NCBI GenBank assembly: GCA_002269645.1
Contig: NIVC01004424.1
Location: 1 to 46,531, forward strand
From: Macrostomum lignano
Lineage: Eukaryota
Reading direction: 5' to 3'
Length of the DNA stretch: 46,531 nt
The translations under genes were made by a program, and so were the position numbers. The notes under the pieces were generated by a model. The model worked only from the letters and a program-made list of their open reading frames with translations. It was not told the origin of the DNA and searched no databases. This document shows positions 15,580 to 40,579 of the stretch, piece after piece (the stretch's first letter is position 1; each line of letters starts with the position of its first letter).

Positions 15580-16740
15580 GTCTGCAGATCCCCATTAACC
15601 CATCTGCAGATCCCCATCATTCCATCTGCAGATCCCCACCATTCGATCTGCAGATCCCCACCATTCCATCTGCAGATCCCCACCAACCCATCTGCAGATC
15701 CCCACAAACCCATCTGCAGATCCCCATTAACCCATCTGCAGATCCCCACCAACCCATCTGCAGATCCCCATTCATCTGCAGATCCCCACCATTCCATCTG
15801 CAGATCCCCATTAACCCATCTGCAGATCCCCACCAACCCACCTGCAGATCCCCACCAACCCATCTGCAGATCCCCACCAACCCACCTGCAGATCCCCACC
15901 AACCCATCTGCAGATCCCCACCATTCCATCTGCAGATCCCCACCAACCCATCTGCAGATCCCCACCATTCCATCTGCAGATCCCCACCAACCCATCTGCA
16001 GATGCCCACCATTCCATCTGCGGATCCCCACTAACCCATCTGCAGATCCCCACCAACCCATCTGCAGATCCCCACTAACCCATCTGCAGATCCCCACCAT
16101 TCCATCTGCAGATGCCCACCATCCCATCTGCAGATCCCCACCATTCCATCTGCAGATCCCCATTAACCCATCTGCAGATCCCCACCATTCCATCTGCAGA
16201 TCCCCACCATTCCATCTGCAGATCCCCACAAACCCACCTGCAGATCCCCACCAACCCATCTGCAGATCCCCACCATTCCATCTGCAGATCCCCACCAACC
16301 CATCTGCAGATGCCCACCATCCCATCTGCAGATCCCCACCATTCCATCTGCAGATCCCCATTAACCCATCTGCAGATCCCCACCATTCCATCTGCAGATC
16401 CCCACCATTCCATCTGCAGATCCCCACAAACCCACCTGCAGATCCCCACCATCCCATCTGCAGATCCCCACCACTCCATCTGCAGATCCCCACCAACCCA
16501 TCTGCAGATGCCCACCATCCCATCTGCAGATCCCCACCATTCCATCTGCAGATCCCCATTAACCCATCTGCAGATCCCCACCATTCCATCTGCAGATCCC
16601 CACCATTCCATCTGCAGATCCCCATTAACCCATCTGCAGATCGCCATTAAACCATCTGCAGATCCCCACCATCCCATCTGCAGATCCCCACCATCCTATC
16701 TTCAGATCCCCACCATCCCGTCTGCAAATCCCCAATTCCC
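15580..16740. repeat. 22-bp minisatellite ccccaccattccatctgcagat, about 52 copies, partly in a 198-bp higher-order repeat
   Basis: Direct repetition. The variant gatgccc recurs at 16001, 16111, 16309 and 16507, the last two spacings being 198 = 9x22. Confidence 0.95.
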
Positions 16741-17229: not shown

Positions 17230-17970
17230 ATGTACAACATTTCGGATTCGAATTGGGAAAGAACTTACGCTATCGATTGGTTGGAAGCAATTTTGAAATT
17301 GAAAAGAGAAGGCCATTTCTACATTGACTCATTTAAATGGGTAGACGTGCTAAAAGTATACCACTTCGATACAGAAGACCGAAACAAGCCAGCAGATCCA
17401 GCAAGACGAATAGCAGAGCATGATGAAAGTTTCGAAAAACTTAAAAACCGGGTTGCTAATCAGGAAGAAATCCCTCCTGTTAAACTATATCCTTCTACTG
17501 GCGAGCATTCGGACCAGTATAGTCTAATTGATGGAAGGCACCGGATTGCTGCCGTTCACCATCACGGATATCAATTCATTTTAGCTCTAGTGGAGGACAT
17601 TCCATCGACGGATATATCAGAGATGACACTGCTGTTGACTAAACAATATCAATTTTGGCTCGATTACTCATACGTGTGCTCAGTGGCGCTTACGATTGGT
17701 GAGGAAATTCTTAGAAAATGTAGGATATTAGGAAGGGATGTCGGAATTTTACCAAATGAAACAGAAGTAACTGTTAATGTGTGCAGTCGTAACTGCGAGA
17801 ATAAGTTTCGCATTAAGTTGGCTCAAGCTGTGGATAATTATGACCCGAAGAAAGCCGAAAAAATTCAAGTCTTCTTTGCGACGTGCAAAGGGTCTGCCTG
17901 GAAATTCAGCTGTGATTCTGTTGAAGGAGTGGCTAATAATCTGGCTTACAATATATGCAAAAAAGTTTAA
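17230..17970 (+). CDS. Intronless protein with ParB/sulfiredoxin-like N-terminal domain (246 aa; possibly ~287 aa from ATG 17108 across a 1-nt indel)
   Basis: IPPVKLYPSTGEHSDQYSLIDGRHRIAAV matches the ParBc core P.I.V...Y.(L/I)IDG.HR..A. The 741-nt ORF is open within AT-rich surroundings. Confidence 0.7.
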   Translation: MYNISDSNWERTYAIDWLEAILKLKREGHFYIDSFKWVDVLKVYHFDTEDRNKPADPARRIAEHDESFEKLKNRVANQEEIPPVKLYPSTGEHSDQYSLIDGRHRIAAVHHHGYQFILALVEDIPSTDISEMTLLLTKQYQFWLDYSYVCSVALTIGEEILRKCRILGRDVGILPNETEVTVNVCSRNCENKFRIKLAQAVDNYDPKKAEKIQVFFATCKGSAWKFSCDSVEGVANNLAYNICKKV

Positions 17971-19365: not shown

Positions 19366-20326
19366 CAAAACAACAACAACAACAACAACAAAATACGCGA
19401 CCCAGCATGCACAGTCACAGTTAGAGCAGGGCGCGTCAGATGGCGCGCCGCAGAGCCTGGGAGCGAACAAAGTCCGCTTCGTTGGCAGTGTCGGGCGCCC
19501 CAGCGTCGCACAGCAGGCAGTCCACGTATCGACGGGTTCGGGCCTGACCCCGCCTGAACGGGCCCTGCAAGGTGAGCAGCAGGACGTCCTGAACGGGTTG
19601 GGGGCAGTAGCCCTCGGCCCGGATCACGTGACCCGCCAGTTGAGGTCGCCGCCGGCGCAAAATGATGGACGGGCGCTGCAGCTTGGCCCGATCGTACAGG
19701 ACCTCGATCCCGACGCTCTCGTCAGCTCGAAAGGCCGCACGGAGCAGCCCTGAGTGCTCCGAGTCCAGCTGCCGCTCCAACGTAGCCGTCAGCGTCCACG
19801 TCTCGGCGTTGTATTAGCAGGACGGTTTCGACCACTGCCTGCCACAGCCGAGCCCTCTGGTGGTCGGGCAGCGCTTCGGACTGGAGGACGGCTGGGATCG
19901 AACGAAAGGCCGCCCAGGCAAGTCCTCTGCGCCGCCGGAGGTCCTCTTCCACGTGGGGCACCAGACCGCCGAGGTAGGTGAACCGCTGGCAGCGTGCGAG
20001 CCTGGTCGTCTGCCCGTCTGCGCCGCGGCACGTCAGGTCCGCTGGAATGTCGGCCGGCACAGTCAGCACCTCGGTCTTCAGCGTGTTGACGATCAGACCG
20101 ACGCTCGATGCCACCTCGACCAGCCTGTCGATCTGGCGCTGGGCGCCTTCAACGGACGAGGACAGGAGGGCGAGGTCGTCGGCGTAGCCAAGCACGCTTA
20201 GGCGCTTTTCGCCGTGGCGGTGACCGATGCGTCTGCGCAGCAGGAAGCCGTCATTAGCCGAGGGGAGTCCGAAGCACCCAGTCCAGAAGCAGCACGAAGA
20301 GGAACGGCGCTAGCGTGTTCTGTTCT
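19366..20326 (-). mobile_element. 5'-truncated RTE-like LINE (RT C-terminal half) with (TTG)n tail and 13-bp TSD
   Basis: TLAPFLFVLLLDWVL, LGYADDLALL, RFTYLG and LLYNAETWTL (with one frameshift near 19810). Tail caacaacaac at 19366-19390. TSD gaaattgctacaa at 19353-19365 and 20327-20339. Confidence 0.9.
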
Positions 20327-20653: not shown

Positions 20654-21231
20654 CTAACAAATGCCTCCAAGACTTAACGAAAGCTCATATTCCATGCCGC
20701 CGCCACTGTTCAAGTGCTTGCCCAGCTGCAGAGGATGGTTAATCTCAGTTATCTGTCGCGGCCACTCAGTCTTGACAATCCTGATGGAGCTGTCCGCAAT
20801 TACTCGTCGTGGCGGCAGCTCGTCGAACTCCATGGATCTCTCGCCAGCTTTGAGACAGTTAATCAAGCCGCCAAGTTCTTTGTCCGTCTGTATGTGACCT
20901 ATCCGTGTACCGTTGTCGATGATAAACATCAATTCGCCGATGTACAATTGGACAGTAGTGCGACTATACTCTGTAGCTGCGATGGTGACTTTATGAATAG
21001 TTAGCCACCACCATTCGATGTTGTCTGGGCACAGAAAGTCAGCAACTGCTACAGCTGGAAGTAATTGAAGACAGCCCAGCAACACCAGCAATGGACAGGA
21101 GCCGCACAATGCAAGCTGCACGATTTTAGTAGGCTGGAATGTTGTCACTGATATATAATATATTGCATTGGTCCATAAATATATTTGAATTCTACCCAAA
21201 AAATCAGCACCAAAAACGCTATACTTACCAT
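20654..21231 (-). CDS. Secreted-family member A, ~160 aa; exons 21231-21229 (ATG) and 21133-20654
   Basis: ATG|GTAAGT donor and attccag| acceptor, phase 0. Hydrophobic signal LLVLLGCLQLLPAVAVA, then CPDNIEWWW and C-terminal LGKH...MEYE...GGIC. TATA-like element upstream. Confidence 0.75.
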
Positions 21232-21280
21232 ACCAAAACGGCAAATGAGTGGCAATGAGAAACTTGCGTCTATGAAGCGA

Positions 21281-21293
21281 CTTTTATATATAT
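21281..21293 (-). promoter_or_regulatory. Probable TATA box of secreted gene A
   Basis: Minus-strand atatatataaaag about 50 nt upstream of the ATG at 21231. Confidence 0.5.
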
Positions 21294-21639
21294 CTACTGA
21301 TAAAGGTGGAGTGGTATACACTAGAGCGATGTCGAATTCATAAATAAAATTTGTCTAATCGATTGTCTATGGCTTTTGTACGAGTACATTGTATCGAATG
21401 TACTTGTCATATGTGCGTCTAGAAATATCAAGCAAACCTACGTTGACCACTAAAGTTCCACTAAAAGTGTTGTTGTAAAAATTTATCTCGAAAAAAATTT
21501 CTCTTGTTCTCTCTTCTTTCAAAGTCGTTTCGAAAGAAACAGAAAGCAAATATAATCAGTTTATGTTAGACTTCAACTTAGTTCGCAACACAGCTTATAA
21601 AACAAAAATTTAGAAGCAAAAAAGCAAAGTCTCGAAGGA

Positions 21640-23073
21640 CTAGGATTCCGTGTAAATGCGAAGAAGAAATTCCAATCGCTTGCCATTCAGCGGCGATTCA
21701 GTCTGTGGCACCACCGTGTAATCACCTGGCGGCAGGGACACGCGGAACACTACCGAGCGCTGGTTGTCTTCGGGGTGTTGAGCCACCTGGTACACGGGTC
21801 GCCTCAGACAGTTAGCCCCTTTATAGATGTCAACAGCTTTGACAGAGAATCGTCGCTTTTCTAGCGGAATGTTGCGCTGCCCCGGCTCTTCCAGACTGAT
21901 CACAACGGTGGCAACTCCGTCCTGATTGCTTCCATCGCAAAAATTTGTCAGGAACGTGTTGTCCTCGAAGAATTCGTCAATTTTTTGACCTGGATACCAC
22001 TCTCCGTAGATGTACTTGCCGTTCCACTCGGCTCCCGTCACGCCGTTGTCCAAATTTCTAGCCAAATGCAAAACTGTCAGGAACTCGAAGAACTTCATAA
22101 AGTCGGACAGCTCCATCCAGTTCTCACCGTCGTCCTGCTTCACTAATCCAGCTAGCTTCATCTGCTCGGGCGTCCACCTGGGATCATTGTCGTTCCATTT
22201 GCCGCGCCATTCAAATTCGCTTAGCGGCCCCCAGGGATTGCAAATCCGGATCAGATCCACCAGCTTGCCATTGTGTGGGATCTGCACTGTGCCTGTGACG
22301 ATGTATTCGTGACCGGACGTCAATCCGAGGCTCTCGAGGTTTTCGCCCAGAATTTCGGTGTGGGTAGCCGCACCAGCGGACAGTTTTTTTGATAGGCAAT
22401 ACTTAATGTTCTCCAGCACCTTTGCCCCGTCCTCCCGCTTGAATGGGATCAACTCGCACACTCCACCAGTGAGGTCGGCCATGGCCTCCAGCTCGAGCCC
22501 GCCAATTAGAGACTCATAGCATCCGTGCAGCTTAGCTAGCGCCTTCTCCAACAGGCAGACCCAGTACTCGCCCTCGTGCGCCGCGGCGTACACAAGCTGG
22601 CCGTCCTTGGTCGGCAGTCTATCGTCCACCATGATCTCCACTTCGCGTCCAAATGGTCGGAAGCGGAACCGGAAGGCGCCGCAGTAACCTGCACCGCTCA
22701 GTGTCTGGTCAGGAAGGATGACCTGGGACAGTAGGTCCGGTCTCTGCGTGATGGCAGCAACAGCAGCCAAGATCCAGCAGTTCTCCAGTTCGCCTTGATT
22801 TATATCAAATCGAGAGAAACCATCTTTGACGAACTCCGGGTCAGCGTCGAGTTCTTTAGGTCGCAGCCACTTGTAATTGAGCTTCTTGTGAGCATAAGTT
22901 AGAGAAGTGTCGTCGGCCGGAAATTCCGGATCTTCAAACAGCCTTTTGCTAGCTCGAAGCTCCCGGATTATCTCATTGTTCTTTTCAACGTTCAGAGTTA
23001 TAAAATTAGTCGTTGACACTCGAAATTGAGAGCAGCTTGCAGTAGAAGGTCTCCAAAACGCCTCTTGCTGCAT
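21640..23073 (-). CDS. Intronless atypical calpain (CysPc + domain III, no penta-EF-hand), predicted active; ~477 aa from ATG 23073
   Basis: FEDPEFPA, DINQGELENCWILAA (Cys), VDDRLPT, WVCLLEKALAKLHGCYESL, GHEY (His), ICNPWG (Asn), and a C-terminal EFLLRIYTES typical of the end of domain III. Confidence 0.9.
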   Translation of the reverse strand: MQQEAFWRPSTASCSQFRVSTTNFITLNVEKNNEIIRELRASKRLFEDPEFPADDTSLTYAHKKLNYKWLRPKELDADPEFVKDGFSRFDINQGELENCWILAAVAAITQRPDLLSQVILPDQTLSGAGYCGAFRFRFRPFGREVEIMVDDRLPTKDGQLVYAAAHEGEYWVCLLEKALAKLHGCYESLIGGLELEAMADLTGGVCELIPFKREDGAKVLENIKYCLSKKLSAGAATHTEILGENLESLGLTSGHEYIVTGTVQIPHNGKLVDLIRICNPWGPLSEFEWRGKWNDNDPRWTPEQMKLAGLVKQDDGENWMELSDFMKFFEFLTVLHLARNLDNGVTGAEWNGKYIYGEWYPGQKIDEFFEDNTFLTNFCDGSNQDGVATVVISLEEPGQRNIPLEKRRFSVKAVDIYKGANCLRRPVYQVAQHPEDNQRSVVFRVSLPPGDYTVVPQTESPLNGKRLEFLLRIYTES

Positions 23074-23661
23074 GACGTTTGCCAGCAAAACTACTAATAA
23101 AATCTGTACAAAGATTAGAAAAAGAGAAGATTATCTCTATTCTCTTTTGAATCAGGGCCGGGTCTTCTTGAACCCGAGTTCCAAGTTATTTGCACATTTA
23201 AATGGGTAAAAAATAGATTTTTCACTGGGAAACCGTATAGTCTATGGGAAAAGTCAATCAATTCTATGCAGTAGAACATACGTCTAAACCATTTTAAAAA
23301 TAGCAAAAAACACAAAATATGAACATAAAATAAACGCAGAGCAAATCAAGTTTAGATGGTGTGAATTGATCACATCCCAGATTAATGCGAGTATAGATTT
23401 ATTGATATTGCAGAATACACCAGGTACAATAGTACGACCTACATTGTATAATTGGCTACATTGTATAATTTACCAGCTACGAGTATATCTGTTACTGGAT
23501 AAATTAGCTCTAATGTTAAAGAGCAACTTTGTATTTTAACCTTTGCAATAACCTTTGCAATTCACAGACTGTGACAAAAACAAACGAAACCGATTTTGAT
23601 TCTACGAAGTTAGATTGAACGATTTAAACAAAAGGCGTGCATATAGTCGTGTATAAACAAT

Positions 23662-25855
23662 ATGTATTAGGACGCAAAGGGAAGGCCCCAAGCGCGCACG
23701 CGTTCGCAGAACAGCTAGGTGGGAGGGGCAGGCAGCAGCAGCCTAAGGGATCAGCTCAAGCGCCTGCAGGTCAGCGATGAGGCAGTCCTAAAGGCAGTGG
23801 CCCAGCAGCATCTGACGGCGACGGCGCAGGGTATCTCTCAGGGACTTCCAGCGCGGGCCATCAGAGCGTTGGTCGGCAGGCGCTCCGGGTCCAGGGCTGG
23901 CTTTCGCAACTCGGTCAACGGCACAGCCTCCATGCTGTACAGGAGGATCGGCTCGACGGCCGCGAGGAACAGGCGCACCTTCAGGTCGTCTCTGGCAGCT
24001 GAATTGAAGACGTTCCTGAGGAGGTGCGCGGCGCGCCATAGCCTGATTTCTTCTGTAGGAGACAATCGCATTGGGATTCATTACCAGGGCGCCGAGATAC
24101 CGCGGAAGTCCTCGCACACCTCGATGCGGTCTCCATTGGGCAGCTTAAGGGTTGGGACGGTATTCATGCCCACGTGCAGCGCCTCCGTCTTGTGAGCAAT
24201 TACCAGCAGCCCAACACGGGCGCCCTCGTCGCAGAGCCTTGTAAGAGCTCGCTGGGCAGCAGCTGGAACGCGGCAGAGCAGTGCGATACGCGAGAGAGGG
24301 AAGCGAAACAGCAGGGTGTCTGGAGCTTCGGCGTGGGCCCAGCAAGTAGCTGTCATCCTCGCGGAGGGACCGACGAAGCACGTAGTGCATAACCACGGGG
24401 AAGAGCAGAGTAGCCAGCGTGTCACCCTGAAGGACGCCTGGGCTGGTGCCGAATTCTTCTGTGGGGCCATCGCTCGACATGACAAAAGCCCTGGAGTCGT
24501 GGTAGAGGTCCCTCACCGCGCTCACCAGCGCAGCATGTACGCCATAATGAGATAGAAGCCACGCCTGGACACCGAGTCAAACGCCTTGCGATCTAAGCGC
24601 CATCTGAGCGCCTGGGACACGCCTCCTTTGCCGAAAAAGACAGGCGGCTTCACTTCATCTGCGTCTATGCTCCAACGGCTTCCCGGACCAGCGAAGATCC
24701 ATCCGTGACAGAAGCCCTTTACGACACTCTGGGCTGCATGCTTGATTCCATCCCTGCTCATGACGATCTATCATTGTTGCTGGTGACTTTAACTCGCTAT
24801 CCAGTTTTATCCAGGCCAGAGATCTGATGGCTGTCAATGGCACCATGCGACAGCGCTTCAGCAAGCTTCCAATTTTATTTGGCCCCAACGGGCGAACCAC
24901 TCGGCTGAACTGGATTTTCTGCCCAACTGCCCTGAGGGTGCGCAGAGTCCTCAACATCCGCCCCGACTGCGTTCAATCTGATCACCGCCTGATGGCCTGA
25001 TCTGCACTGGCAGAGACTCCCGCCTGCGCCACCTCACCCGCTCTGGGCCGACCTGAGAAACCCGGACACGCGGCAGGCCTTCCTACTGCTTACCACTACT
25101 CCTGCTCTAGCCCAGTCCTTCGAGTCTTTCCATCACGCCGTCGAGGATGCTGCAGCGCTTCTCCCACGGAGACAGGCAAACCCTCCAAAGGCCCTGTGGG
25201 ACCGCAATTGCATCATCTCCCAGGCAAGGCGGCATGTGCAGAGCACTGCTGCACTCCACGGCCGTGACAGCAACCAGGCCAGTGCTGCCAGGGACGAGCT
25301 GCAGTGCATCTACGCCCAGCGGACTGAAGCCTGCCTGCATCAAAGAAGCTGTGAGCGAAATCCAACTCGCCACTGACAACTGCCGCCATAGTGCTGCCTG
25401 GAGAGCCATCAACCAGCTGACTGGCAGGAAGCCCAGGCCTAACACCATCGTTGGCGCTGATTCCACCGAGAACCGCAAGGCCCTGCTGGCCACCCACTAC
25501 CGCGAGGTGCTCAACGCGCCCGCTCCAACTGCGCCTCTTCTGCCGATCCCAGCTCTACTTCGCTCCAGCTCAGCCAGGCCCTTCAACACCGGCCCCATCA
25601 CTGTAGGTGAAGTTGACCGAGCACTGAGGACCATGCGAGCTGATGCTGCCGCTGGGGTGGATGCCGTCCCTCCCAGGGTCCTGAAGCTGCCCGAGCTCAC
25701 TCCAATCTTCACCAACCTGCTGAACAAGCACTGCAGCCTTGGAGGCAACGAGGCCGCCTCCTGCCCAGCCTCAATCAGCTGCTGCTGAGCTTCCAAAGCG
25801 GCTTCTACCCGGACAGGTGGACAGATGAGCAATTCACAGTATTCCTTCATCCATG
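23662..25855. mobile_element. RTE-like LINE with 5' inversion: minus-strand RT 3' half (~23662-24591) plus inverted plus-strand APE/linker (~24592-25855)
   Basis: Minus strand: RKAFDSVSRR, GVLQGDTLATLLF, VEPILLYSME. Plus strand: SERL, FICVYAPT, IVAGDFNS, GPNGRTTRL, SDHRL, FNTGPITVGEV, QSGFYPDRWTDEQ. Many frameshifts. Confidence 0.85.
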
Positions 25856-26051
25856 ACCGTAGCTACGAGTATGTACATTTTTATTTTTAGTTTTTGTTTA
25901 ACACGCGAACTTCCATATAGTCTTTGATGTAAAGCCAGAATGCCAATGGGAAGCGAAACTTGTTAGTCTTAATTAACGAACCCAAAACTTGTGTTTAGAA
26001 TCAAGATCTTTCATTCCTCGACTTTGTCGTTTTTCGTTAAAAAGACCAATA

Positions 26052-26638
26052 ATGGTAAGCGCTTATTTGCTCCAGTGACTAAACTGTATTGATGCCTGTA
26101 TGTCTTCATTCATTGACGCAATCAGTTTCAATTTCAGGCTCAGCACAAGTTGCTGAAGAGATCAACAATATTTGCTCTCATCGTCATTCATCTATACTTG
26201 ATAATTACGCCATCAAACAAAGCCTTAGGCAGACGAAGAGATCAAGAAGAGTTGACCTACTGCAAAGGCAAAATGCGCTGGTGGGTCATAGTCAGACAGA
26301 GGGTGACACTGTTCGCTAGCAACTTCGGCGGCGCCAAAGCTTACGTGTATTTCAACAGGATTTTGCCTCCCAGTGGCTTACTACAATGGCACAGTTATGA
26401 AATGAGACGCCATGTTGCTCCAAATATGGGCGCAGATGTGGTGTTCCTGGATAAAAATCACTACATAGTGCCAGCTTATAGCTACTATCGACTGCGTCGA
26501 ATGGCCAGGCTTCGTAAAGGCTCATTCAACGAGATCAATGGTCACCTGCTGCTTGGTAGTCACGTTCACATGTACCACTACATGAGGTACGAATACACTA
26601 CCGTAGACGGTGGCAGCTGTGGCGACACATTCACTTAG
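26052..26638 (+). CDS. Secreted-family member B, ~167 aa; exons 26052-26054 (ATG) and 26138-26638
   Basis: ATG|GTAAGC donor and atttcag| acceptor, phase 0. Signal IFALIVIHLYLII, then CKGKMRWW and LGSH...MRYE...GGSC. AATAAA at 26810. Confidence 0.75.
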
Positions 26639-28012
26639 TTCTCTGGAGATTGAAGAGCTTAGACTAGCTTGTACTGTCTAAATTTCTTCTGGGAGTCTTT
26701 CTTGAGTGCGCTTTGAGTTATTCGCAAAAAATACATTTAGTATATGAAAATTCAAAACTTTCAATTTTATTAACTCATTTTTGAGTTTCGATTGTTAATT
26801 TTCATTTGAAATAAAACGGATCAGTTTGGAGACACTTCGATTTTGTAGCTACTAGTTGTGTCAGACTTTTGCTGATATTTGTAGAGATGCATTAAGTGTT
26901 ACATTTAGTACTTATAATCTTACAGTATTATAGAAAGAAGCTGTTTTCTTCCATAATCCTTTTAAAGATTTTAGTACATTAGGCCCCAATCTCTGCTAAG
27001 AAAAAATGCTATTGCTTTTGATAGGAGGCAGATCCAGTGTTCATCTTTTGATATGTTGTGCATTTCTTATTGCTCTATCGATATTCATAAAGCTTTTCGT
27101 TCAGAAATAGTTTTAAAGGCAGCTTTCAACGGAAAAATACACTACGGAGATAAGAAATTTCACGATTTTCAACACTAAAACAGAGATTGGGTCTCTTAAC
27201 AGTGTCAGAGAAAGTTCTAATCACACTATTTTGTGCCCCACATGCTGCTCTAACGACGCATTAATCGATTTTTCATGTTAAATTGGTCTGGTCATTATTT
27301 CAAATGTTTTTTAATTGATTTAGATTTAGAATTCCTTGGTTAACATGTTGCAGATTGTGCATTTTGTTCGAGAAAATCTTTTTTTTCTCACAAGGGAGTC
27401 AATTTTCTTACTGCCACATATTCTTACATGTACTGCTTCATTAAATTTGTGCAGGATCGAGGTCTGCGGTACCCTGACACAAAGCCTTCGGCGAATTCAT
27501 TCAACAATAGCACTGAAGAAATTTTTGCTCATTCCGCTGACTGCTGAGTAGACGATCACACGGTGTGTTCAGCGGCCCTGACCTTCTAATCGTCAGGAAT
27601 GTACACTATACTCTCTGTGGAGACTGGCCCTCATTGTTGTAAAATGCACGACAACCCCCAGGCGGATGTTGCCCTCCCCAGCATGAACACTTTAAATAAA
27701 TTATCTTCAGACACTCGTTAGATAAACAATGAAAAAGTAGCATATTTTTCGAGATTTTAAAATTAGAAACTTGCAAACTAGAATAAAGTACGGGTCTTTC
27801 GAAAAAATGCTGTGATGGTCAGAAGTTGTTGCAAGAAACTGAAATAATGTTATAGCAGTGAGAGCATTCAACTCAAACTATTTGTTTATGGCATTTCCCT
27901 ACAAGCAAGATGAAGCAATCGGTTGAAGTTATTTGCTTAGTTAGATCAAATCGGAAGTTTAAATATTAGGAGACTATTGTCGTCATAATTAATCTTAGTA
28001 GCTTTTAGAAAC

Positions 28013-28498
28013 ATGGCACTGCGATCAAGCAGTTTGCTGCGAGCATTGCTGCTGCTCAGTCAAACATTCAGTTTTGCTTGGCCCACTGACACCTCAGTCA
28101 GGCATTGCAGAACGAATTCGCACTGGTTGAGATTTAACCTCATCAGCCTGGAGCTTTGGCCCGATCCGGCATCAATCTCGGCGCCAAAGGCGAGCCTGAC
28201 CTATACAACATTATTCAAATGGAGCAGCCTTGACGACAAGACCTACCTGAAATTGGAACACCTCCCACTGCCAGATCCAGCCGAGATCAACGGAGTGTAC
28301 TATTTTAAGCTGAACCAACGACAATACAGATCGGTCAGAAGAAGTCTCGCCAACTTGACCGTCAGTTACAATTCGATGTCTGGGCAGGTGAATCGTTACC
28401 TGGAGTTCCCGATCGAAATCGGCAGTCAAAGATTTCAAAATTACTGGATTTCAATTATGTACTTTTCGGCATTTGGCGGTGTTTGTCCTCTCTGTTAA
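28013..28498 (+). CDS. Secreted-family member C, 161 aa
   Basis: Signal MALRSSSLLRALLLLSQTFSFA, then CRTNSHWL and C-terminal IGSQ...GGVCPLC with the same spacing as the other members. Confidence 0.75.
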   Translation: MALRSSSLLRALLLLSQTFSFAWPTDTSVRHCRTNSHWLRFNLISLELWPDPASISAPKASLTYTTLFKWSSLDDKTYLKLEHLPLPDPAEINGVYYFKLNQRQYRSVRRSLANLTVSYNSMSGQVNRYLEFPIEIGSQRFQNYWISIMYFSAFGGVCPLC

Positions 28499-28767
28499 TT
28501 TTTTTGGGTTAACGCGCTCCATCCCGAGTGCTACTTAAAGTATATGACTTCTTTGCTGCAATCTGTAAACATACAATCGTATAGTCAGATATATCAGATA
28601 TATGTTACAAGTCATTTCAACCCTCTGGGGGGCACCAAAAGAAATTCACAAAACGTTCATTAAATAAGCTGCCAAGTTCTGAAGAATTTCTAAATAACTT
28701 AATAGTAGATTAGCAATGTCCTCATAAAGTTTAGCCATTGTCTTATTTGTCTGAATGCTTGAAATAT

Positions 28768-28917
28768 TGTAGCGGGTCGCCATCACAAACCCGAAATATC
28801 ATAACTCCGAAAACCAAAATAGCGGTTTGCGTTGCTAACACTGCCGGAGTTATGATTTTTCGGGTTTATGATATTTGAGGTTTATGGTATTTCGGGTTTG
28901 TGATGGGCGTTGCTACA
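28768..28917. mobile_element. 150-bp hairpin MITE with TGT...ACA ends
   Basis: tgtagcgggtcgccatcacaaacccgaaata pairs with tatttcgggtttgtgatgggcgttgctaca. No clear TSD. Confidence 0.6.
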
Positions 28918-28997
28918 TGTAAATCGGTATTCGAAGTTGTGATTTTTCGGGTTTGTGATGCTCCCCATTGTTCTAGTTAAAAATCCATTTTCTGATG

Positions 28998-29573
28998 TCA
29001 TTTCTGTGGTCTATCGCTCGTGATGATGTGGTGCTTTGTGTCATGTTTAACTTTGGTGGCCGGAGGTAGCCGCCCTCCTTCGACGTACGTGAAGGTGCTG
29101 CGGTAACGATCGATGAGTGCGCGTACACGAGGATCGCAGTGGTCTGGATACGCCAGCGACACGGCGAGTTCATCGAGGTCCACTGCGGTAACCGGCAGAG
29201 ATGGCGTATGTAGTCTCGTTGTAGGGTCAACTAGTCGACGCCCCTTGCAGTCGACGATCAATTCGAAATGACTGAGGAAGTCGTACCCCAGGATAGGTTG
29301 CACGACGGATGCGACCAGGAACGTCCAGCGGAATTCACGACGGAGTCCTCGGATGTTGACGTCGAGCGAGATCTCTCCAGCGACCGGTATCGATGCACCG
29401 GTGGCGGTGGTCAGGCGAAATCCGGTCTCCTGAAGGTCCCGGTGGAATTGCTTCTGCGGAATTATCGACACTGCTGCGCCGGTATCGAGCAGGAACGGGT
29501 AGTACTTGCTGTCTATCTTGATATCCACCACCAGGAATTTCTTGCTCGCCGCCGGGGATGATGCACTGCTCAC
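28998..29573 (-). CDS. Gypsy aspartic protease and start of pol (truncated)
   Basis: FLLDTGAAVSII, ILGYDFLSHF, IVDCKGRRL and HHIIT. Confidence 0.85.
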   Translation of the reverse strand: MSSASSPAASKKFLVVDIKIDSKYYPFLLDTGAAVSIIPQKQFHRDLQETGFRLTTATGASIPVAGEISLDVNIRGLRREFRWTFLVASVVQPILGYDFLSHFELIVDCKGRRLVDPTTRLHTPSLPVTAVDLDELAVSLAYPDHCDPRVRALIDRYRSTFTYVEGGRLPPATKVKHDTKHHIITSDRPQK

Positions 29574-29596
29574 TGCGGCAGGTTGGGCAGTGCCCT

Positions 29597-30496
29597 CTAG
29601 TTTGACGGCTGACGTGTCGGAGAGGCTGACCTGGACTGTGCAGGTGTCTTTTCGTGAGTACTCAGAATTCGCGGCCGCCTACCACCCAAGGCGGACGGGA
29701 AACGACACCACGGTCGGCAGGTAAGCGCGCGTTCACCGTAGTAGATGTGGGCCCGGCAGACGACCGGACGCTGTCCTGGCTTGAACGGGGTGACGCTTGT
29801 CTGTGGCTGCAGTTGTCGGCGTGGCGGTTCGTCCCGTCTGGAGTTGATAGTCGGCGGTGGCGTCGGCTGTACAGCGCTGACTGAGCTCGCCGAGCTCTGG
29901 TAGCTGACCATGAAATCAGCGATTTCAGCGAGCTTATCTGGCGATTCCTGCTGGAAGCCTGATAGTGCGACTCGTAGCTCACTGGGCAGGCAGCGGATGA
30001 GAGTCGCCTTGAGCATGTCGGAGCAGGAGCCCATGCCGCACTGAGCCATCTTGGCGCTGAGCTTCTTGACGAAGATTGAGGGCTTGTCGCCACCTAGATC
30101 GGACGTGGCCAGGATCTCGTTGATCTTCTCCTGCTGACTCTTCTGCAGAAGGTTGGAGATGGCGGCTTTAAGCGGCTCGTACTGTCGAGGCGTTGATGTC
30201 GTGATCAGCATCGACGAGATATCCTCCGGCAGGTGCGCAACCAAGTAGTGGTACTTGGTCTCGTCCGAAGTTATGCGCGCTAGGTGGAATTGCGACTCTA
30301 GGGTCCGGAACCAAGCTTCCGAATTGTTCCGGTACAGCGGCGGAACCTTAACGGACACGGCGGACACGCTTGGCTCAAGTATCGGTGGTGTATGTTGAAC
30401 AGGTAGCTGCCCAGTGGGGTTGAGCACCGGGGCCTGGTTGTTGTCGGCGGCTGCTGCGGCCTGCTGCGATAGCTGCGGATCGCTTTCGTCGGCCAT
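29597..30496 (-). CDS. Gypsy gag
   Basis: VKVPPLYRNNSEAWFRTLESQF, LGGDKPS, LPSELRVAL and C-terminal CRAHIYYGERALTCRPWC, typical of Gypsy gag. Confidence 0.85.
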   Translation of the reverse strand: MADESDPQLSQQAAAAADNNQAPVLNPTGQLPVQHTPPILEPSVSAVSVKVPPLYRNNSEAWFRTLESQFHLARITSDETKYHYLVAHLPEDISSMLITTSTPRQYEPLKAAISNLLQKSQQEKINEILATSDLGGDKPSIFVKKLSAKMAQCGMGSCSDMLKATLIRCLPSELRVALSGFQQESPDKLAEIADFMVSYQSSASSVSAVQPTPPPTINSRRDEPPRRQLQPQTSVTPFKPGQRPVVCRAHIYYGERALTCRPWCRFPSALGGRRPRILSTHEKTPAQSRSASPTRQPSN

Positions 30497-30515
30497 GACG
30501 ACTCACCGGACCAGT

Positions 30516-30906
30516 TGTAGCGACTGTAAAATGAAAAAGGTAGAGCTAGGCGGTGGTTCGCCCTTGTTTGCTTCTTTGTTTGGCACTTGAGTTTCTCGAA
30601 TATCCAAAGAGGCTTGGAGCAGATGCTGGTTTAGCTACTGTATATTTATACTTAATTGACCTTCCGGAAATTTCTAGAATCATTTTAGTGCGGTAAAACA
30701 AACTGTATAGTAAGTATCGTACGTACGGTATTCATATTTTGTATGATGATGAATTACAGTAAATAAATATTTATTGAGTAGAAATATTTACTACGAGATT
30801 AGAAATAGCTAGATAAAGAATATTCTAGAATTTAACTGGTACTGTATTGCAGAAATTTCGGGAAGTAAACATCATACGGTATAGAACTTTCGCGAAGGTC
30901 ACTACA
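30516..30906 (-). repeat. Gypsy 5' LTR (391 bp)
   Basis: Ends tgtagcgac (30516) and gtcactaca (30906), adjacent to the PBS. Confidence 0.75.
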
Positions 30907-31092
30907 GTTACACAGTCAATAAGCAATATTAAGTGAATATCATTAATAACTTTAAACATTTAACTATACCTTTACCAGTTTTGTGATGCCGTATGCAGTT
31001 AAGCGCTGCGTTACCCTTAGGTTAGCAATAAAGGTTTAGTACAATAGCAGAATCTTCAACAGATAAACAAGACAACAGCACTATAACAAAAG

Positions 31093-31421
31093 TTCACCAA
31101 CACTTTAGTTCCCCAGCACTTTAGTTCCCCAGCACTTTAGTTCCCCAGCACTTTAGTTCCCCAGCACTTTAGTTCACCAGCACTTTAGTTCACCAGCACT
31201 TAGTTCCCCAGCACTTTAGTTCACCAGCACTTTAGTTCACCAGCACTTTAGTTCACCAGCACTTTAGTTCACCAGCACTTTAGTTCACCAGCACTTTAGT
31301 TCACCAGCACTTTAGTTCACCAGCACTTTAGTTCACCAGCACTTTAGTTCACCAGCGCTTTAGTTCTCCAGCACTTTAGTTCACCAGCACTTTAGTTCAC
31401 CAGCGCTTTAGTTTTCCAGCA
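31093..31421. repeat. 16-bp minisatellite accagcactttagttc, about 20 copies
   Basis: Direct tandem repetition. Confidence 0.95.
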
Positions 31422-31597
31422 CCGATAAACTGAACTGGCTTTGTTGAAATTAAGTTCGACATTTCCCTACTTTACTGGAAAACCCATACTTAACGTGTCA
31501 AAAGCAAGTAGTGCAAGGAGCAGTGCAAGTCCCAATGCAAATCCAGAGTGAAAAAAAAACACTTTTGCCAGCATTTCCACCGGTAGATATTCAACAT

Positions 31598-31837
31598 TTA
31601 TCCGCGCTTTTTGAGATATTGAGCAACACATGAGGATCTGACATGGAGTAGTTCGTATCCAGATTTTAGGAAAATCAATGTCTTTGAACCATGAGCTCTA
31701 TAGCATTGGACACTCAGATAAAAAGTATCTGGACTTTTTACCATTACGCCATATACTCGTAATGGAGCATTGGGGTGGCAAAGTGCCAAAATGACAAAGA
31801 AAAAGTCGAAAGCTACCGTCAATAAAATAGTTTTCAT
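31598..31837 (-). CDS. Possible 79-aa signal-peptide ORF of unknown function
   Basis: Hydrophobic N-terminus MKTILLTVAFDFFFVILALC, starting 32 nt after the stop of member D. No family motif. Confidence 0.25.
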   Translation of the reverse strand: MKTILLTVAFDFFFVILALCHPNAPLRVYGVMVKSPDTFYLSVQCYRAHGSKTLIFLKSGYELLHVRSSCVAQYLKKRG

Positions 31838-31869
31838 TCAAACAGTTAGTTATTTACCAGTTAGCGCAG

Positions 31870-32574
31870 TTATTTCAAGCAGATTGGACACAAGCCACCT
31901 TTTCTTGTATGGTATGTGTAGGACATATTCTTAATGCTTACAGTGTGATAACCAAGAAATATCTTCACTTTCATTCTGACCACTTGACCGGACCAATCAA
32001 TCAGCGAGATTCGCGCGTAACTGTCCGCCAGAACAAAGAAAATATTTTTCTTGCCGTTCATAAAAGTCCAACCATTGAAAGAGCGCTTTTGTTCCAGACG
32101 CATTCGCTGCTTGGTGTAGCGCACCAACGTCAGTGTGGAGTGCCTGTCGTCGTTCTGATTTGAAACTTCATAAAACTCCACGTAAGCTGCATCCGTATAG
32201 GAAATTTTGGATTTAACGTAGAGAACATGCGCAACGAGCATCCAGTATTCGGTACCATCCTCACAGATCTCGTGCCCCAGAACATAACTAGCCGGCAGCA
32301 AGATGGACTGAGATACAATGATTGCCACCAGTATACGGAGTATTGTGATCATGGGCGACGACATCTGAGTGGATTGGTAAAACAATGGGTGGCTTATTGC
32401 CTATGCGCGTGAAGCTTTGAGGTAATATCAGGCTATTTTAGTACATCGGCATGCGTTTATTGTCGAGTTTCAGGCTTATGGTAGACTATGGCATGTTGTT
32501 GAATCGTTAATACTTGTTAGACTTTGTTCTGAATTTCTATTATTCTGCAACAGACAGAAGAGAAAACTTACCAT
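31870..32574 (-). CDS. Secreted-family member D, ~165-177 aa; exons 32574-32572 (ATG) and 32364 (or 32400)-31870
   Basis: ATG|GTAAGT donor with two in-frame acceptors. Signal ITILRILVAIIVSQSILL, then CEDGTEYW and FLGYH...MSY...GGLCPIC. Confidence 0.75.
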
Positions 32575-32877: not shown

Positions 32878-34263
32878 TCACGTGAACACTCGAAGCAAAA
32901 ACTCCACCCTGTTGCCTTCAATCAGGGTCTCAATGCGAGGAATGACAACATAATCGCCAGGTCGCAGACTTGCTCTTGAAACAAATTGTCTTTCCAACTC
33001 CGTTCCCGTGAATCGCATCAAAGGTTCGCCTTCGGGCAACTTGCCCGGATAAATTTCAATGATTTTCTTGGCGAATTCCGAGCCATCAGGGTACAGATGG
33101 CGTCGTTCACCCTCTTCCAAACTGATAATGACGTACGCCGACCCATCCGGATTTGCTGACGCACCGGAAACGGTAAAGCTGAAGCGGTCGTCATGATAGA
33201 ACTCATCCGGACCCTGGTTCATCGTCCACGCTCCGTAGACCTTCTTGCCAGTCCACTCTGACCCGGTCACGCCGCAGTCTAAATTTCTGGCCAAATGAAG
33301 AATTTGAACGGACTCAAACATTGGCACGAAATCAGAAAACTCAATTGTAGTTTCACCTTCTGTAGCATTGGCTTGCAACTGGTACCAGTCGGATGACAAG
33401 CGGGTATATTCTTGATCTAGCAAAGCTCTTCTATAATCCAAAATCTTCACAACATCGATTGAACTGCCGTCCCGTGGAACCTGAGCAGTGCCGCTAATAA
33501 TATAATGGCCTCCTGGCGGCAGGTTGGGCAATTTTTTCATGCATTTTTCAGCGTCATCGCTGCTTTCATTGCGTGCACAGAACGCTTCAACGATCAGTTC
33601 CCGTTTTAAAGCTGACTGCAATATTTTCAGTAAATCGTCCACCTTGATTTCTCTTACATAGATCTCTTCGCAAACTCCACCAGTGAGTAGTGGCAATAGC
33701 TCTAACGATGCGCAAGTTGGTACATCTTCGTATGAGCCGAACAGCTTAGCAAAAGCCTTCTCGAGTAGGCACAGCCAGAACTGGCCACGGTGAGTTCCGG
33801 AAAACGCTAGTTCCCCGTTTATAGTAGGGAGCCGATCGTCAATAGTGAGCTCAAATTCTTGGCCAAATTGGCGAAAGATGAAGCGAACAGAACCGTCATA
33901 GTTCTTGCCGTGCAGTGTCTGACCCGGTGGAATAACGCTGTGTAAGAGGTCCTGCCGATTTCCGATTCGGGCTAGACATAGTAATAAGCAATAGTTGGCA
34001 CTTTGACCTCTGACGTTCGCGTTGAATCCCGACCCGACGTTAACGTCTCCGACCTCGAACAGTAGTGCTGTGCCATTTCCGGTCATTTCGTGCGGCCTTA
34101 GCCAGACTAAAGGTTTAGAATGGTATCTTCCTGATGTCGAATGGGCCTGATGCTCATCATCCTGTCCAGCATGTACAGAACTGTAATCGGCTGGAAATTC
34201 CGGATCTTTAAGCGGCTTTTCTCCGGGTTTCAGCTTTTTAAACGCTTTGAAAAGTCTCTTCAT
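32878..34263 (-). CDS. Intronless calpain-like protein, predicted catalytically inactive (461 aa)
   Basis: LKDPEFPA, IDDRLPT, WLCLLEKAFAKLFGSYE and EFLLRVFT are colinear with calpain A. Triad positions read RGQSANYC (C->Y), GGHY (H->G) and LDYR (N->D). Confidence 0.88.
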   Translation of the reverse strand: MKRLFKAFKKLKPGEKPLKDPEFPADYSSVHAGQDDEHQAHSTSGRYHSKPLVWLRPHEMTGNGTALLFEVGDVNVGSGFNANVRGQSANYCLLLCLARIGNRQDLLHSVIPPGQTLHGKNYDGSVRFIFRQFGQEFELTIDDRLPTINGELAFSGTHRGQFWLCLLEKAFAKLFGSYEDVPTCASLELLPLLTGGVCEEIYVREIKVDDLLKILQSALKRELIVEAFCARNESSDDAEKCMKKLPNLPPGGHYIISGTAQVPRDGSSIDVVKILDYRRALLDQEYTRLSSDWYQLQANATEGETTIEFSDFVPMFESVQILHLARNLDCGVTGSEWTGKKVYGAWTMNQGPDEFYHDDRFSFTVSGASANPDGSAYVIISLEEGERRHLYPDGSEFAKKIIEIYPGKLPEGEPLMRFTGTELERQFVSRASLRPGDYVVIPRIETLIEGNRVEFLLRVFT

Positions 34264-35270: not shown

Positions 35271-36579
35271 GTCTTCACCAGGGCCAGGCTCACTCAACTC
35301 GGGCCAAACCTGGTTTTCCCTGACGTTTGCGGGTTCGAGAGCATACCGCTGCTCGCCCGGTACCTCAGGGACACGGGACGAGCTGAGTTCTTCTCCACCG
35401 CCGGTGAGGAGGACCGCGCGGCAGGTGAAATCGACGGGTCCCCCTGAGAGACATCACTTTGATGGAAAACATTGGTCGCCAGTGGCCAGCGAAATGGGCG
35501 GCGCGCCTCCTCCGCCTAGCGTTGCCCCCTGCAGCTGAGTCAACTCTATTGACGAGTAGATCGACCCATTGACAATAGAATAGAATTGTACACAATCACC
35601 CGGGAGAACAGCTAAACTGACAATTTATCCCAGAATAGCGTCAAAAGAGAAAACGCAGAATGCGGTCTGTTTTCCGAAATTTGCGCATCATACAGCGCAT
35701 ACAGCGTCCCCGTTTTATCTGTTGCTTTAGCTATTAAAAGCATCGCAGTTTGTAATGCAACAACTGTGTAAAAATACCTACCTTGTACCTAGTTGCATTG
35801 GTATAAAATGAATAATGAAAAGTTAATGAATAATAATAGCCTAATCGATTCGTTTTGGCCGAAAAATAAGCTTCTTTAAGCTTCGTTGCTTCTCTCTGAC
35901 CGCTCGCCCTGTGACTGTATTGTTTTGCTAACTTTCTAACGACGGCAAACCCAAAACAGAAATTATATGCGCAAATCTAAAAAGCAGGCATTCCGTCACG
36001 CTAGACGCCTCGGGTAGCTGCAACACCCACTGAGTTTGTTTATTTCTTCTCAGCAAATTTTGTGGTTTTTGCGAGTCAAAAACGAACAAAAAAGTTTTAA
36101 AGACATTTAATTTAAGCTACTCGACAAGCACTTTGATTTGCGATACTCGCCAAGTTGGAGGTTCCTTGCGATCTTTTCAGCAGCCAAGTTTACAGAAAGT
36201 TTAAACCGCATGCATAAGGAGAGTAATCTTTGCTGCAAGTGAAAGCGACGTGAACTTTTAGCCATTTGTGCTGTTGCGTGCAAGGTGAAGGTGTTAAATT
36301 ACAACCTTAAACAGGTATGCGTTGTACGAGACTGCAAAAATTTCGAGTGTATTTTGTATTCAGGATTCAAATTGTCGTGGGAGCGAATGCAGGTTTAAAT
36401 TTGCAATGATTTTGCAAGAACAGAAAGGATGAGAGCGCAAAGTTATTTCCAAACTGGTTCGGTCTTAGCTTAGAGCTACATGTAGGTCGCAACTCTGTCT
36501 AACAAAAATGAAATATTCTGTCTGAAATACCAGTACTATCTAACAGGTGTCTACCATTCTGCCTAGCCGGTGTGTGAGG

Positions 36580-38228: not shown

Positions 38229-38994
38229 GAAACAGTCGTGTGTGTGTTGCACTCTATCATGTGTATCACTTATGCACTGTAAAAAAGGTGCGAAAGTTAG
38301 ACACAGTACAAAACACTTAGAAACTGTGAAAATATTCAGAATAAAATTATACGTTAAGTCACTAATTTTTTTGAACTCATTCAGAATTCCCAAACACAGC
38401 CGAGATCTCGGTTCTGAAAAGAGCTGCTCGAATAATGAATGACTCATGCCGGTAAACGCAAGCTTATATGCATACATGTCTACACATGTAAACATGCAGT
38501 CAGAATTGCCGAAAATTCGGGTTTATAAAGACGCGAATTAATGCCAAGCCATGGAAACTTGATCCGTTTCATTCGCAATATTATATATGTGCAGCATTGG
38601 CGGAGTGCTGTGACAGGCTCTGCATGCATGCGGTGTAACTCCGCGGGTGCCAAAAGAAAGTGGTTTTCTCTGACAGTGTTCCCCCGCATGCCTGCTGTTG
38701 CTACCAGCTTCTGGAGTCATACAATCCAATTATATTATTAGCTTTTTCACCTGTGGTCGAATCGGAGAAGCTCTTGACTAAGCAATTAGGTTAAAAAAGC
38801 AAGCCGGTCGCCCAGGAGTCGAACAGGCTCAGGCCAACACTATAAAGAATGAAATGTTGCCATTTTAGCCCTAGAAATTGCGTAGAATCCTAATTAATAA
38901 AAAACGCCTACGGCCGCTCTCTTTCTGCCACGAGCAACTTCTCGAAAGTTAGGAAAACTCTGCAGACAAAAAAGCCCAGCGCCTGGACAAAGTT

Positions 38995-39837: not shown

Positions 39838-39906
<69 letters not shown>

Positions 39907-40542: not shown

Positions 40543-40579
<37 letters not shown>

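What the first reader, a model, noticed from the sequence alone, without database searches (positions are those of the whole stretch)
20654..32574. Cluster of four highly divergent, unrecognised secreted ~160-aa proteins
Four small genes (A 20654-21231-, B 26052-26638+, C 28013-28498+, D 31870-32574-) each have a signal peptide, an N-terminal C-x5-[WY] (CPDNIEW, CKGKMRW, CRTNSHW, CEDGTEY) and an ungapped C-terminal block [LI]G-x-[HQ]-x6-[MI]-x-[YI]-x6-GG-x-C. A and B share 13 of 30 residues in EIN..L.LG.H......M.YE......GG.C. The middles are barely alignable. Inference: a lineage-specific, fast-evolving secreted family closed by one N-to-C disulfide, e.g. reproductive, adhesive/mucus or immune effectors. 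I do not recognise the family.
Basis: partly seen in the sequence, partly recalled or inferred. Interest (0 to 1): 0.82.

Follow-up and report, generated by a model that had tools for sequence, protein, structure and literature searches.

The report
Flatworm testis-region secreted beta-sandwich family
Four real, very divergent paralogous genes in the flatworm Macrostomum lignano encode small signal-peptide proteins with a predicted beta-sandwich fold; two are published as testis-region transcripts, so this is an undescribed but ordinary kind of lineage-restricted reproductive gene family.

Summary
The window is a whole contig of the Macrostomum lignano genome (NIVC01004424.1). Deposited transcript-based models confirm A, B and C, including the ATG-only first exon of A and B. 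D is unannotated.

Leave-one-out HMMs recover A, B and D strongly and C weakly. All 12 ORF copies on three sister contigs are intact, with pN/pS 0.24 (p = 8.5e-5).

A search of 1.84 billion representative proteins found one outside relative, a 153-aa protein from an unidentified sequencing run. Pfam and PDB sequence searches found nothing.

AlphaFold models of B and D (pLDDT 77 and 82) give the same nine-strand all-beta fold. Its best Foldseek matches are C2 domains, and none is significant (TM 0.4-0.5).

Wiberg et al. 2021 list A and C as 'Testis region' orthogroups in 9-10 Macrostomum species, with dN/dS 0.28 and 0.38. The adjacent calpain is listed the same way.

Best reading: a genus-restricted family of secreted proteins from the male gonad region, spread by local duplication partly together with a calpain gene. 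The disulfide, the secretion and the exact role remain untested. Interest is modest.

The parts
21229..21231 (-). Gene A, coding exon 1: the start codon only (ATG|gtaagt), followed by a 95-nt phase-0 intron (21228-21134)
   Evidence: Sequence. The deposited partial protein P0006 reads ...CRFG-M-PTKIV... across this splice.
20654..21133 (-). Gene A, exon 2 (with exon 1: 160 aa; Mlig004263.g1 here, Mlig015125.g1/g2 on sister contigs). Signal peptide, then CPDNIEW ... LGKHLNSGGGMEYELSLSLGGIC.
   Evidence: 'Testis region' orthogroup OG0015154_1, 9 species, dN/dS 0.279. 8 synonymous and 5 nonsynonymous differences among the three copies.
26052..26054 (+). Gene B, coding exon 1: the start codon only (ATG|gtaagc), followed by an 83-nt phase-0 intron (26055-26137)
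   Evidence: Sequence. The deposited 167-aa protein P0001 equals the spliced model.
26138..26638 (+). Gene B, exon 2 (167 aa in total; Mlig010399 family). Closest window member to the outside homolog P0008 (32% identity).
   Evidence: AlphaFold model pLDDT 77.4, pTM 0.72, nine beta strands.
28013..28498 (+). Gene C, single exon, 161 aa (Mlig010834.g1 family); the most divergent member
   Evidence: 'Testis region' orthogroup OG0017754_1, 10 species, dN/dS 0.384. Leave-one-out score 12.8 bits; 0 of 2000 shuffles reached it.
31870..32364 (-). Gene D, main ORF from an internal ATG, 164 aa. Not present in the deposited annotation.
   Evidence: Intact on all three sister contigs. Best-connected member: A-D 6e-8, leave-one-out 4.9e-9. 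AlphaFold model pLDDT 82.3, pTM 0.75.
32572..32574 (-). Possible ATG-only first exon of D (ATG|gtaagt). In-frame acceptors end at 32401 (catag|GCA) and 32365 (ctcag|ATG).
   Evidence: Sequence only. No transcript model, so unverified.
21640..23073 (-). Calpain-like gene 1 (477 aa, Peptidase_C2 + Calpain_III; Mlig005293 family), directly upstream of A on the same strand. Part of the same testis-region cluster.
   Evidence: Pfam 6.6e-87. 'Testis region', 18 species.
32878..34263 (-). Calpain-like gene 2 (461-aa ORF), directly upstream of D on the same strand. 37% identical to calpain 1. Catalytic Cys replaced.

Best explanation
A, B, C and D are real protein-coding paralogs of a family restricted to Macrostomum or its close relatives.

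Each encodes a signal peptide followed by one domain of about 125 residues. That domain is predicted to fold as a nine-strand beta-sandwich. The only two invariant cysteines sit at its very start and very end, which fits a disulfide that ties the termini together.

The genes lie in a 14-kb cluster with two calpain-like genes. The two small genes that each sit just downstream of a calpain (A and D) are also the most similar pair. The cluster therefore most likely grew by duplication of a [calpain + small gene] block plus further local duplications giving B and C. Retrotransposons inserted later.

A, C and calpain 1 are expressed in the testis-containing body region.

Inferred mechanism: the proteins enter the secretory pathway of male germline cells or testis cells. 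They then act as small, stable binding modules on or around sperm, for example in Golgi-derived granules, on the sperm surface or in testis fluid. They evolve under purifying selection at the elevated rate typical of reproduction-related genes.

Shown: homology, coding constraint, transcript-based models for A-C, and the testis-region annotation for A and C. Inferred: secretion, the disulfide, the fold, and any sperm-related role.
For: Organism and copies. The window is M. lignano contig NIVC01004424.1, with two sister contigs carrying the same locus.

Homology. Motifs, Cys spacing and N-terminal hydrophobic regions.

Transcript support. The deposited annotation is transcriptome-based and contains A, B and C, with the ATG-only exon spliced as predicted.

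Coding constraint. All 12 ORF copies are intact, with 17 synonymous against 14 nonsynonymous differences, pN/pS 0.24, binomial p = 8.5e-5.

Outside homolog. P0008 has the same architecture over its full length, E = 4e-6 against 1.84e9 proteins.

Fold. Two independent AlphaFold models (B and D) have the same strand order in register.

Expression and rates. Wiberg et al. 2021 Table S1 lists A and C as 'Testis region', with dN/dS 0.279 and 0.384. Calpain 1 is also 'Testis region'. In situ work has largely validated that class as gonad-expressed.

Block duplication. The calpains are 37% identical and A-D is the best small-gene pair.
Against: No expression annotation was found for B, and no transcript model exists for D.

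'Testis region' is a body-slice annotation, not a cell type. Brand et al. 2020 note that a specialised gut epithelium lies in that region.

In that study signal peptides were not enriched among testis-region orthogroups, so secretion plus testis expression is unremarkable.

The AlphaFold models rest on alignments of six sequences. For B, two of the five models failed (pLDDT about 40). No coordinates were available, so the Cys-Cys distance could not be measured.

The tight calpain-to-A spacing (0.4 kb) is not kept on the sister contigs, where it is about 2.4 kb. Physical linkage need not mean functional coupling.

C is only weakly linked by sequence.
Confidence: 0.65

Rival explanations
1. The domain is a very divergent member of the C2/PLAT-like beta-sandwich superfamily. 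It would then work as an extracellular lipid- or membrane-binding module. This concerns ancestry and biochemistry, and is compatible with testis expression.
For: For both models the best credible Foldseek PDB matches are C2 domains (a stand-alone C2 domain 3w57, PLC-beta, PLC-epsilon, NEDD4), with probability 0.97-1.0 and TM 0.40-0.53.
Against: No match reaches E <= 0.001, and rmsd is 5-8 A. No Pfam C2, PLAT or ML hit even at E <= 1. No PDB sequence hit at E <= 10. The invariant residues are only Cys, Gly and Ser, with no conserved Asp cluster for Ca2+. Small beta-sandwiches match each other weakly by default.
Confidence: 0.2
2. The proteins are secretions of non-gonadal tissue lying in the same body slice, for example specialised gut epithelium or gland cells. 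Their function would be digestive, mucus or immune rather than reproductive.
For: Positional RNA-seq resolves body regions, not cells. Brand et al. 2020 acknowledge a specialised gut epithelium in the region. A signal peptide suits gland products.
Against: In situ tests showed that most tested testis-region transcripts are gonad-expressed, and the class overlaps strongly with germline-FACS genes. The neighbouring calpain carries the same annotation. The gene IDs were not found in the supplement text held for the seminal-fluid screen, which drew its candidates from tail-region transcripts.
Confidence: 0.12
3. The small genes and the calpains form a functional pair, for example a co-transcribed unit or a protease with its modulator or substrate, rather than merely sharing a duplication history.
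For: Two independent same-strand [calpain -> small gene] pairs 0.3-0.4 kb apart. Calpain 1, A and C share the testis-region annotation. M. lignano has many polycistronic precursor transcripts. D is missing from the annotation, as would happen if it sat in the calpain-2 transcript.
Against: The calpains have no signal peptide, whereas the small proteins do, so they occupy different compartments. An AATAAA follows calpain 2, and a TATA-like box precedes A. The A-calpain spacer is about 2.4 kb on the sister contigs. B and C have no calpain partner. There is no sequence relation to calpain domain III.
Confidence: 0.08
4. The ORFs are chance or decaying ORFs between transposons, and the similarity is an artefact.
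For: The cluster is interrupted by reverse-transcriptase and gag/protease fragments. D is unannotated. C is barely alignable.
Against: Significant leave-one-out recovery. 12 of 12 intact copies with an excess of synonymous change. Transcript-based models. Orthologs in 9-10 species with dN/dS below 0.4. Confident structure predictions.
Confidence: 0.03

Closest known systems
Macrostomum 'testis-region' reproduction-related orthogroups (Arbore et al. 2015 positional RNA-seq; Brand et al. 2020, PMC7336406; Wiberg et al. 2021, PMC8662610)
   Same: A and C are literally two of the 643 testis-region orthogroups analysed there. Their dN/dS values (0.28, 0.38) sit in the range of neighbouring testis-region entries.
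   Different: In those tables they are anonymous rows. I found no text linking A, B, C and D as one family, describing D, the fold, the Cys pair or the calpain linkage. No main text mentions the gene IDs.
C2 domains (PLC, NEDD4, synaptotagmin type beta-sandwich)
   Same: Size (about 125 aa), all-beta sandwich, and best structural matches for both models.
   Different: The matches are not significant. There is no sequence similarity and no Ca2+-binding aspartates. These proteins carry signal peptides and a terminal Cys pair, whereas C2 domains are mostly cytosolic modules of larger proteins (own knowledge).
Macrostomum lignano seminal fluid proteins from prostate gland cells (Weber et al. 2018, PMC5977470)
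   Same: Small, signal-peptide-bearing, taxon-restricted reproductive proteins of the same animal.
   Different: Those come from tail-region (prostate) transcripts. A and C are testis-region, and the gene IDs were not found in the supplement text held for that screen.
Clustered small sperm or seminal beta-sandwich protein families in other animals, such as nematode major sperm proteins and mammalian spermadhesins (CUB domain). Recalled from general knowledge; a lead, not a test.
   Same: Small single-domain beta-sandwich proteins tied to the male germline or ejaculate and encoded by local multigene clusters.
   Different: No sequence or significant fold match to MSP or CUB appeared in any search here. 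MSP lacks a signal peptide.

Membership tests
One homologous family comprising A, B, C, D | Each member is recovered by a profile built from the others, above all unrelated ORFs | tested here: met
   Leave-one-out against 519 window ORFs: D 4.9e-9, A 3.5e-5, B 7.7e-4; C is the top non-member but at E = 0.51. With P0008 added: 38-47 bits for A, B and D, and 12.8 bits for C; 0 of 2000 shuffles reached the real score.
One homologous family comprising A, B, C, D | Shared architecture: signal peptide, C-x5-[WY], C-terminal LG-x-[HQ]...GG-x-C block, fixed Cys-Cys spacing | tested here: met
   Regex and hydropathy. Spacing is 119-126 residues in all four and in P0008.
Classical secreted proteins | Cleavable N-terminal signal peptide and no other membrane anchor | tested here: inconclusive
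   Hydrophobic N-terminal cores (Kyte-Doolittle 1.55-3.2), small residues at -3/-1, and no later hydrophobic 19-mer above 0.95. SignalP and experiments were not available.
   They are the only Cys invariant across all five sequences. A, C and D carry a third Cys.
C2 domain (Pfam PF00168) | Sequence match to the family HMM | tested here: not met
   No Pfam family at E <= 1 apart from two chance-level hits, CpcD and DUF1489.
C2 domain (Pfam PF00168) | Significant superposition on solved C2 structures | tested here: inconclusive
   C2 domains are the top hits for both models, but at E about 0.01-0.1, TM 0.40-0.53 and rmsd 5-8 A.
C2 domain (Pfam PF00168) | Conserved acidic Ca2+-binding loop residues | tested here: not met
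   The invariant columns are only C, G, S, G, G, C.
Calpain domain III (PF01067), i.e. derivation from the neighbouring calpains | Profile-profile similarity to domain III of the two adjacent calpains | tested here: not met
   hhalign probability 0.1%, one aligned column.
Macrostomum testis-region reproduction-related genes | Differential expression in the testis-containing body region in positional RNA-seq | tested here: met
   Published table: Mlig015125.g1 (A) and Mlig010834.g1 (C) are 'Testis region'. B was not found in the stored, truncated table. D has no gene ID.
Macrostomum prostate seminal fluid proteins | Tail-region / prostate gland expression | tested here: not met
   A and C are annotated testis region. 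The IDs are absent from the supplement text held for Weber et al. 2018.

The most novel reading that the evidence does not exclude
The family is a new beta-sandwich fold with no detectable relatives outside macrostomid flatworms. Its products would be sperm-associated secreted proteins acting in sperm-female or sperm-sperm interactions in a hermaphrodite under strong sexual conflict. In this reading they are functionally tied to the co-duplicated calpain and pseudo-calpain genes, forming a male-germline two-gene module.
Probability: 0.1. Interest if true: 0.55.

Novelty: new member of a known kind. Interest (0 to 1): 0.3.

Why it matters
M. lignano is a model for sexual selection in hermaphrodites, and it can be manipulated by RNAi and transgenesis. 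A defined four-gene family of secreted proteins from the testis region gives a concrete target for asking what taxon-restricted male reproductive proteins do. It also comes with a confident fold prediction and orthologs across the genus. The work adds an unannotated gene (D) and shows that two published anonymous orthogroups are paralogs. Beyond that field it is one more orphan reproductive gene family. It does not open a new kind of biology.

Tried and rejected
Word-indexed protein searches with profiles of four and then five sequences returned only the query genes.

The exhaustive HMM search added a single protein, P0008. Its run, SRR29421764, could not be tied to an organism. Its 1.7-kb contig carries no other gene.

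The metagenome scan could not use the family alignment because it is too divergent. With P0008 alone it found nothing.

Pfam, PDB sequence profiles, Foldseek against PDB for two models and Foldseek against viral structures gave no significant match.

I considered that the small proteins derive from calpain domain III, which is C2-like. hhalign rejected this.

tblastn found no further family members or calpain remnants in the window.

The gene IDs were absent from all searchable main texts. They were also absent from the stored supplements of Wudarski 2017, Grudniewska 2018, Brand 2020 and Weber 2018. Some of those files are truncated, so absence is weak evidence.

An operon reading of calpain-to-A was considered and down-weighted, because the spacer differs by about 2 kb between sister contigs.


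Full report
**Where the window comes from.** An exact-protein look-up of gene C places the window as the complete 46,531-bp contig NIVC01004424.1 of assembly GCA_002269645.1. That accession is the Mlig_3_7 genome of the free-living flatworm Macrostomum lignano. The same locus occurs on two further contigs, NIVC01001642.1 (L001) and NIVC01002721.1 (L004). This is expected for a neopolyploid genome. The window is eukaryotic. It holds retrotransposon fragments, satellites and mostly intron-poor genes.

**Checking the observation.** All four genes are at the stated places.
- A is ATG 21231-21229, a 95-nt intron, then 21133-20654 on the minus strand.
- B is ATG 26052-26054, an 83-nt intron, then 26138-26638 on the plus strand.
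- C is 28013-28498 on the plus strand, a single exon.
- D is an ORF 32364-31870 on the minus strand, with a possible ATG|gtaagt mini-exon at 32574-32572.

The deposited transcript-derived protein for B is identical to my spliced model. For A, the partial model from this contig reads ...CRFG-M-PTKIV... across the junction, and the sister-contig copy (97% identical) starts MPTKIV. The annotation of this assembly is built from RNA-seq and transcript assemblies. D is not in the deposited annotation.

The motifs check by regular expression: CPDNIEW, CKGKMRW, CRTNSHW and CEDGTEY, plus the ungapped block [LI]G-x-[HQ]-x6-[MI]-x-[YI]-x6-GG-x-C. A and B share 13 of 30 residues in that block. The distance between the N-terminal and C-terminal Cys is 119-126 residues. 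All N-termini have a hydrophobic core with small residues at -3/-1. Nothing later looks like a membrane span.

**Is it more than chance?** Pairwise BLASTP gives A-D 6e-8 over the full length, A-B 1e-4, C-D 7e-5 and B-D 7e-4. A-C and B-C are not significant.

I built an HMM from three members and searched all 519 window ORFs of at least 40 aa. The fourth member was always the best non-training hit: D 4.9e-9, A 3.5e-5, B 7.7e-4, C 0.51. Using mature sequences plus the outside homolog, leave-one-out scores are 38-47 bits for A, B and D and 12.8 bits for C. None of 2000 shuffles reached the real score.

C is therefore the weak link. It is supported mainly by its C-terminal block, its Cys positions, its size and its location. 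No further members or remnants exist in the window.

**Are they genes?** All four ORFs are intact on all three contigs. The differences among copies are 17 synonymous and 14 nonsynonymous. That gives pN/pS 0.24, with binomial p = 8.5e-5 against neutrality. A, B and C have transcript-based models.

Two independent AlphaFold runs were done with six-sequence alignments. B gave mean pLDDT 77.4 and pTM 0.72. D gave 82.3 and 0.75, with all five models at 70 or above. Both show the same nine-strand all-beta architecture, in register relative to the conserved Cys.

**Relatives.** Two word-indexed searches of 5.8 billion proteins found only the genes themselves, named 'hypothetical protein BOX15_Mlig...'.

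An exhaustive HMM search of 1.84 billion cluster representatives found exactly one more protein, P0008, at E = 4e-6. It is 153 aa and comes from a 1.7-kb genomic contig of run SRR29421764. It has the same layout: a signal peptide, VCPSGTEWW, and IHGNLQLGQHVHEDGDIKYEYTTRVAGRC. It is 32% identical to B. Its organism could not be identified.

Pfam, the PDB sequence profile search and metagenome scans were empty.

Foldseek against PDB gave no match at E <= 0.001 for either model. The best credible matches for both models were C2 domains, at TM 0.40-0.53 and rmsd 5-8 A. The viral structure library gave nothing. Calpain domain III is itself C2-like and calpains are the neighbours, so I tested a profile-profile relation to it. 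There is none.

**Expression and evolution from the literature.** Table S1 of Wiberg et al. 2021 (PMC8662610) lists the following:
- Mlig015125.g1 (gene A) as orthogroup OG0015154_1: 'Testis region', 9 species, dN/dS 0.279, tree dS 7.1.
- Mlig010834.g1 (gene C) as OG0017754_1: 'Testis region', 10 species, dN/dS 0.384, tree dS 5.3.

The neighbouring calpain 1 (Mlig005293.g2) is also 'Testis region', in 18 species, and has the highest whole-worm expression of the three.

That annotation comes from positional RNA-seq of body fragments. In situ hybridisation has shown that most tested testis-region transcripts are gonad-expressed. The authors do note that a specialised gut epithelium lies in the same slice. 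B was not found in the stored (truncated) table, and D has no identifier.

**Genomic logic.** Reading the minus strand, calpain 2 (34263-32878) is followed by D, and calpain 1 (23073-21640) is followed by A. B and C lie head-to-tail on the plus strand between them. The two calpains are 37% identical, and A-D is the closest small-gene pair. This fits an old duplication of a two-gene block, with the small gene diverging faster.

The spacers are young and variable. A 1.9-kb gag/protease retroelement piece (28991-30907) is absent from L004. The A-calpain 1 spacer is 0.4 kb here but about 2.4 kb on the sister contigs. I therefore read the linkage as shared history and probably a shared testis-active neighbourhood, not as an operon.

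**What it most likely is and does.** This is a genus-restricted family of small proteins with signal peptides. Each has a single beta-sandwich domain, probably pinned by an N-to-C disulfide, and is expressed in the male gonad region.

The most likely role (inference) is as stable extracellular or granule-stored binding modules associated with sperm or testis fluid. Their rate of evolution is typical of reproduction-related genes. Selection on them is clearly purifying.

Alternatives, each with an explicit test in the report sections:
- A very divergent C2/PLAT-type lipid-binding module. This is compatible with the main reading.
- A product of non-gonadal tissue in the same body slice.
- A functional pairing with the calpains.

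**Novelty and verdict.** The kind of thing is familiar: a taxon-restricted, gonad-region, secreted gene family in an animal where hundreds of such orthogroups are already catalogued.

What I could not find described in the searchable literature:
- A, B, C and D form one family.
- D exists.
- The shared ATG-only first exon.
- The predicted fold and terminal Cys pair.
- The co-duplication with a calpain.

Interest is modest.

Noticed in passing
window 32878-34263 (-): Calpain-like gene 2 has lost the catalytic Cys (NCW in calpain 1 aligns with NYC), and the His/Asn regions are degenerate. Yet the 461-aa ORF is intact on three contigs with pN/pS 0.20. It is a likely pseudo-protease under constraint. 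The deposited model is only 304 aa and spans 985 nt, which implies a 70-nt intron that would truncate the protein.
   Followed up: partly
window 21640-23073 (-): Calpain-like gene 1 (Mlig005293 family) keeps the catalytic motif. It shows 12 synonymous and 0 nonsynonymous differences among the three copies. It is a published 'Testis region' orthogroup in 18 Macrostomum species.
   Followed up: partly
window 28991-30907: This retroelement piece carries a gag-like ORF (DUF7041, 29597-30496) and an aspartyl-protease ORF (28998-29573). It is present here and on L001 but cleanly absent from sister contig L004. It is a recent insertion between genes C and D.
   Followed up: yes
window 21276-21500 versus L001 1105-3342 and L004 1346-3285: There is an indel of about 2 kb between gene A and calpain 1. 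The spacer is 0.4 kb in the window and about 2.4 kb on both sister contigs. A's upstream region, including the TATA-like box at about 21290, lies at the edge of this break.
   Followed up: partly
window 21229-21231, 26052-26054, 32572-32574: Three of the four paralogs begin with a coding exon that is just ATG, followed by gtaag (phase-0 intron). Deposited models confirm this for A and B. C and the outside homolog P0008 lack it. I did not check whether such start-codon introns are common in this trans-splicing species.
   Followed up: partly
window 15581-16734; 36539-38244; 8215-8647; 31091-31422; 43574-43927: Satellite arrays: 22 nt x 53, 26 nt x 66, 31 nt x 14, 16 nt x 21, and (CTGT)n x 90. 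The 22-nt array creates spurious 200-400-aa ORFs on both strands.
   Followed up: yes
window 19722-20195 (-) and about 23700-25850: Reverse-transcriptase and LINE-like ORF fragments flank A and lie between calpain 1 and B. These segments are GC-rich (about 58%) compared with about 38-45% around the small genes.
   Followed up: partly
window 6699-7877 (+) and 10621-11079 (+): Two GC-rich paralogous ORF segments share strings such as VVMATHKC.(K/T)CG..QLL and LQVASPVESEFAV. Neither has a Pfam match. They may be copies of an unclassified repeat or a duplicated gene.
   Followed up: no
window 17230-17970 (+): An intronless 246-aa ORF has a weak, sub-threshold ParB N-terminal domain match (E = 4e-4). 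This exact sequence is not in the protein collection.
   Followed up: no
window 39659-40926 (+) and 40954-42146 (+): ORFs with long CAG-encoded poly-Q runs are followed by ORFs with no Pfam hit at E <= 0.01. These are probably exons of a larger unannotated gene.
   Followed up: no
L003 1-1723 (Logan SRR29421764 contig): This contig holds the only outside homolog of the family. It is a single-exon gene in AT-rich flanks containing short inverted-repeat-like sequence. The source organism is unidentified.
   Followed up: partly
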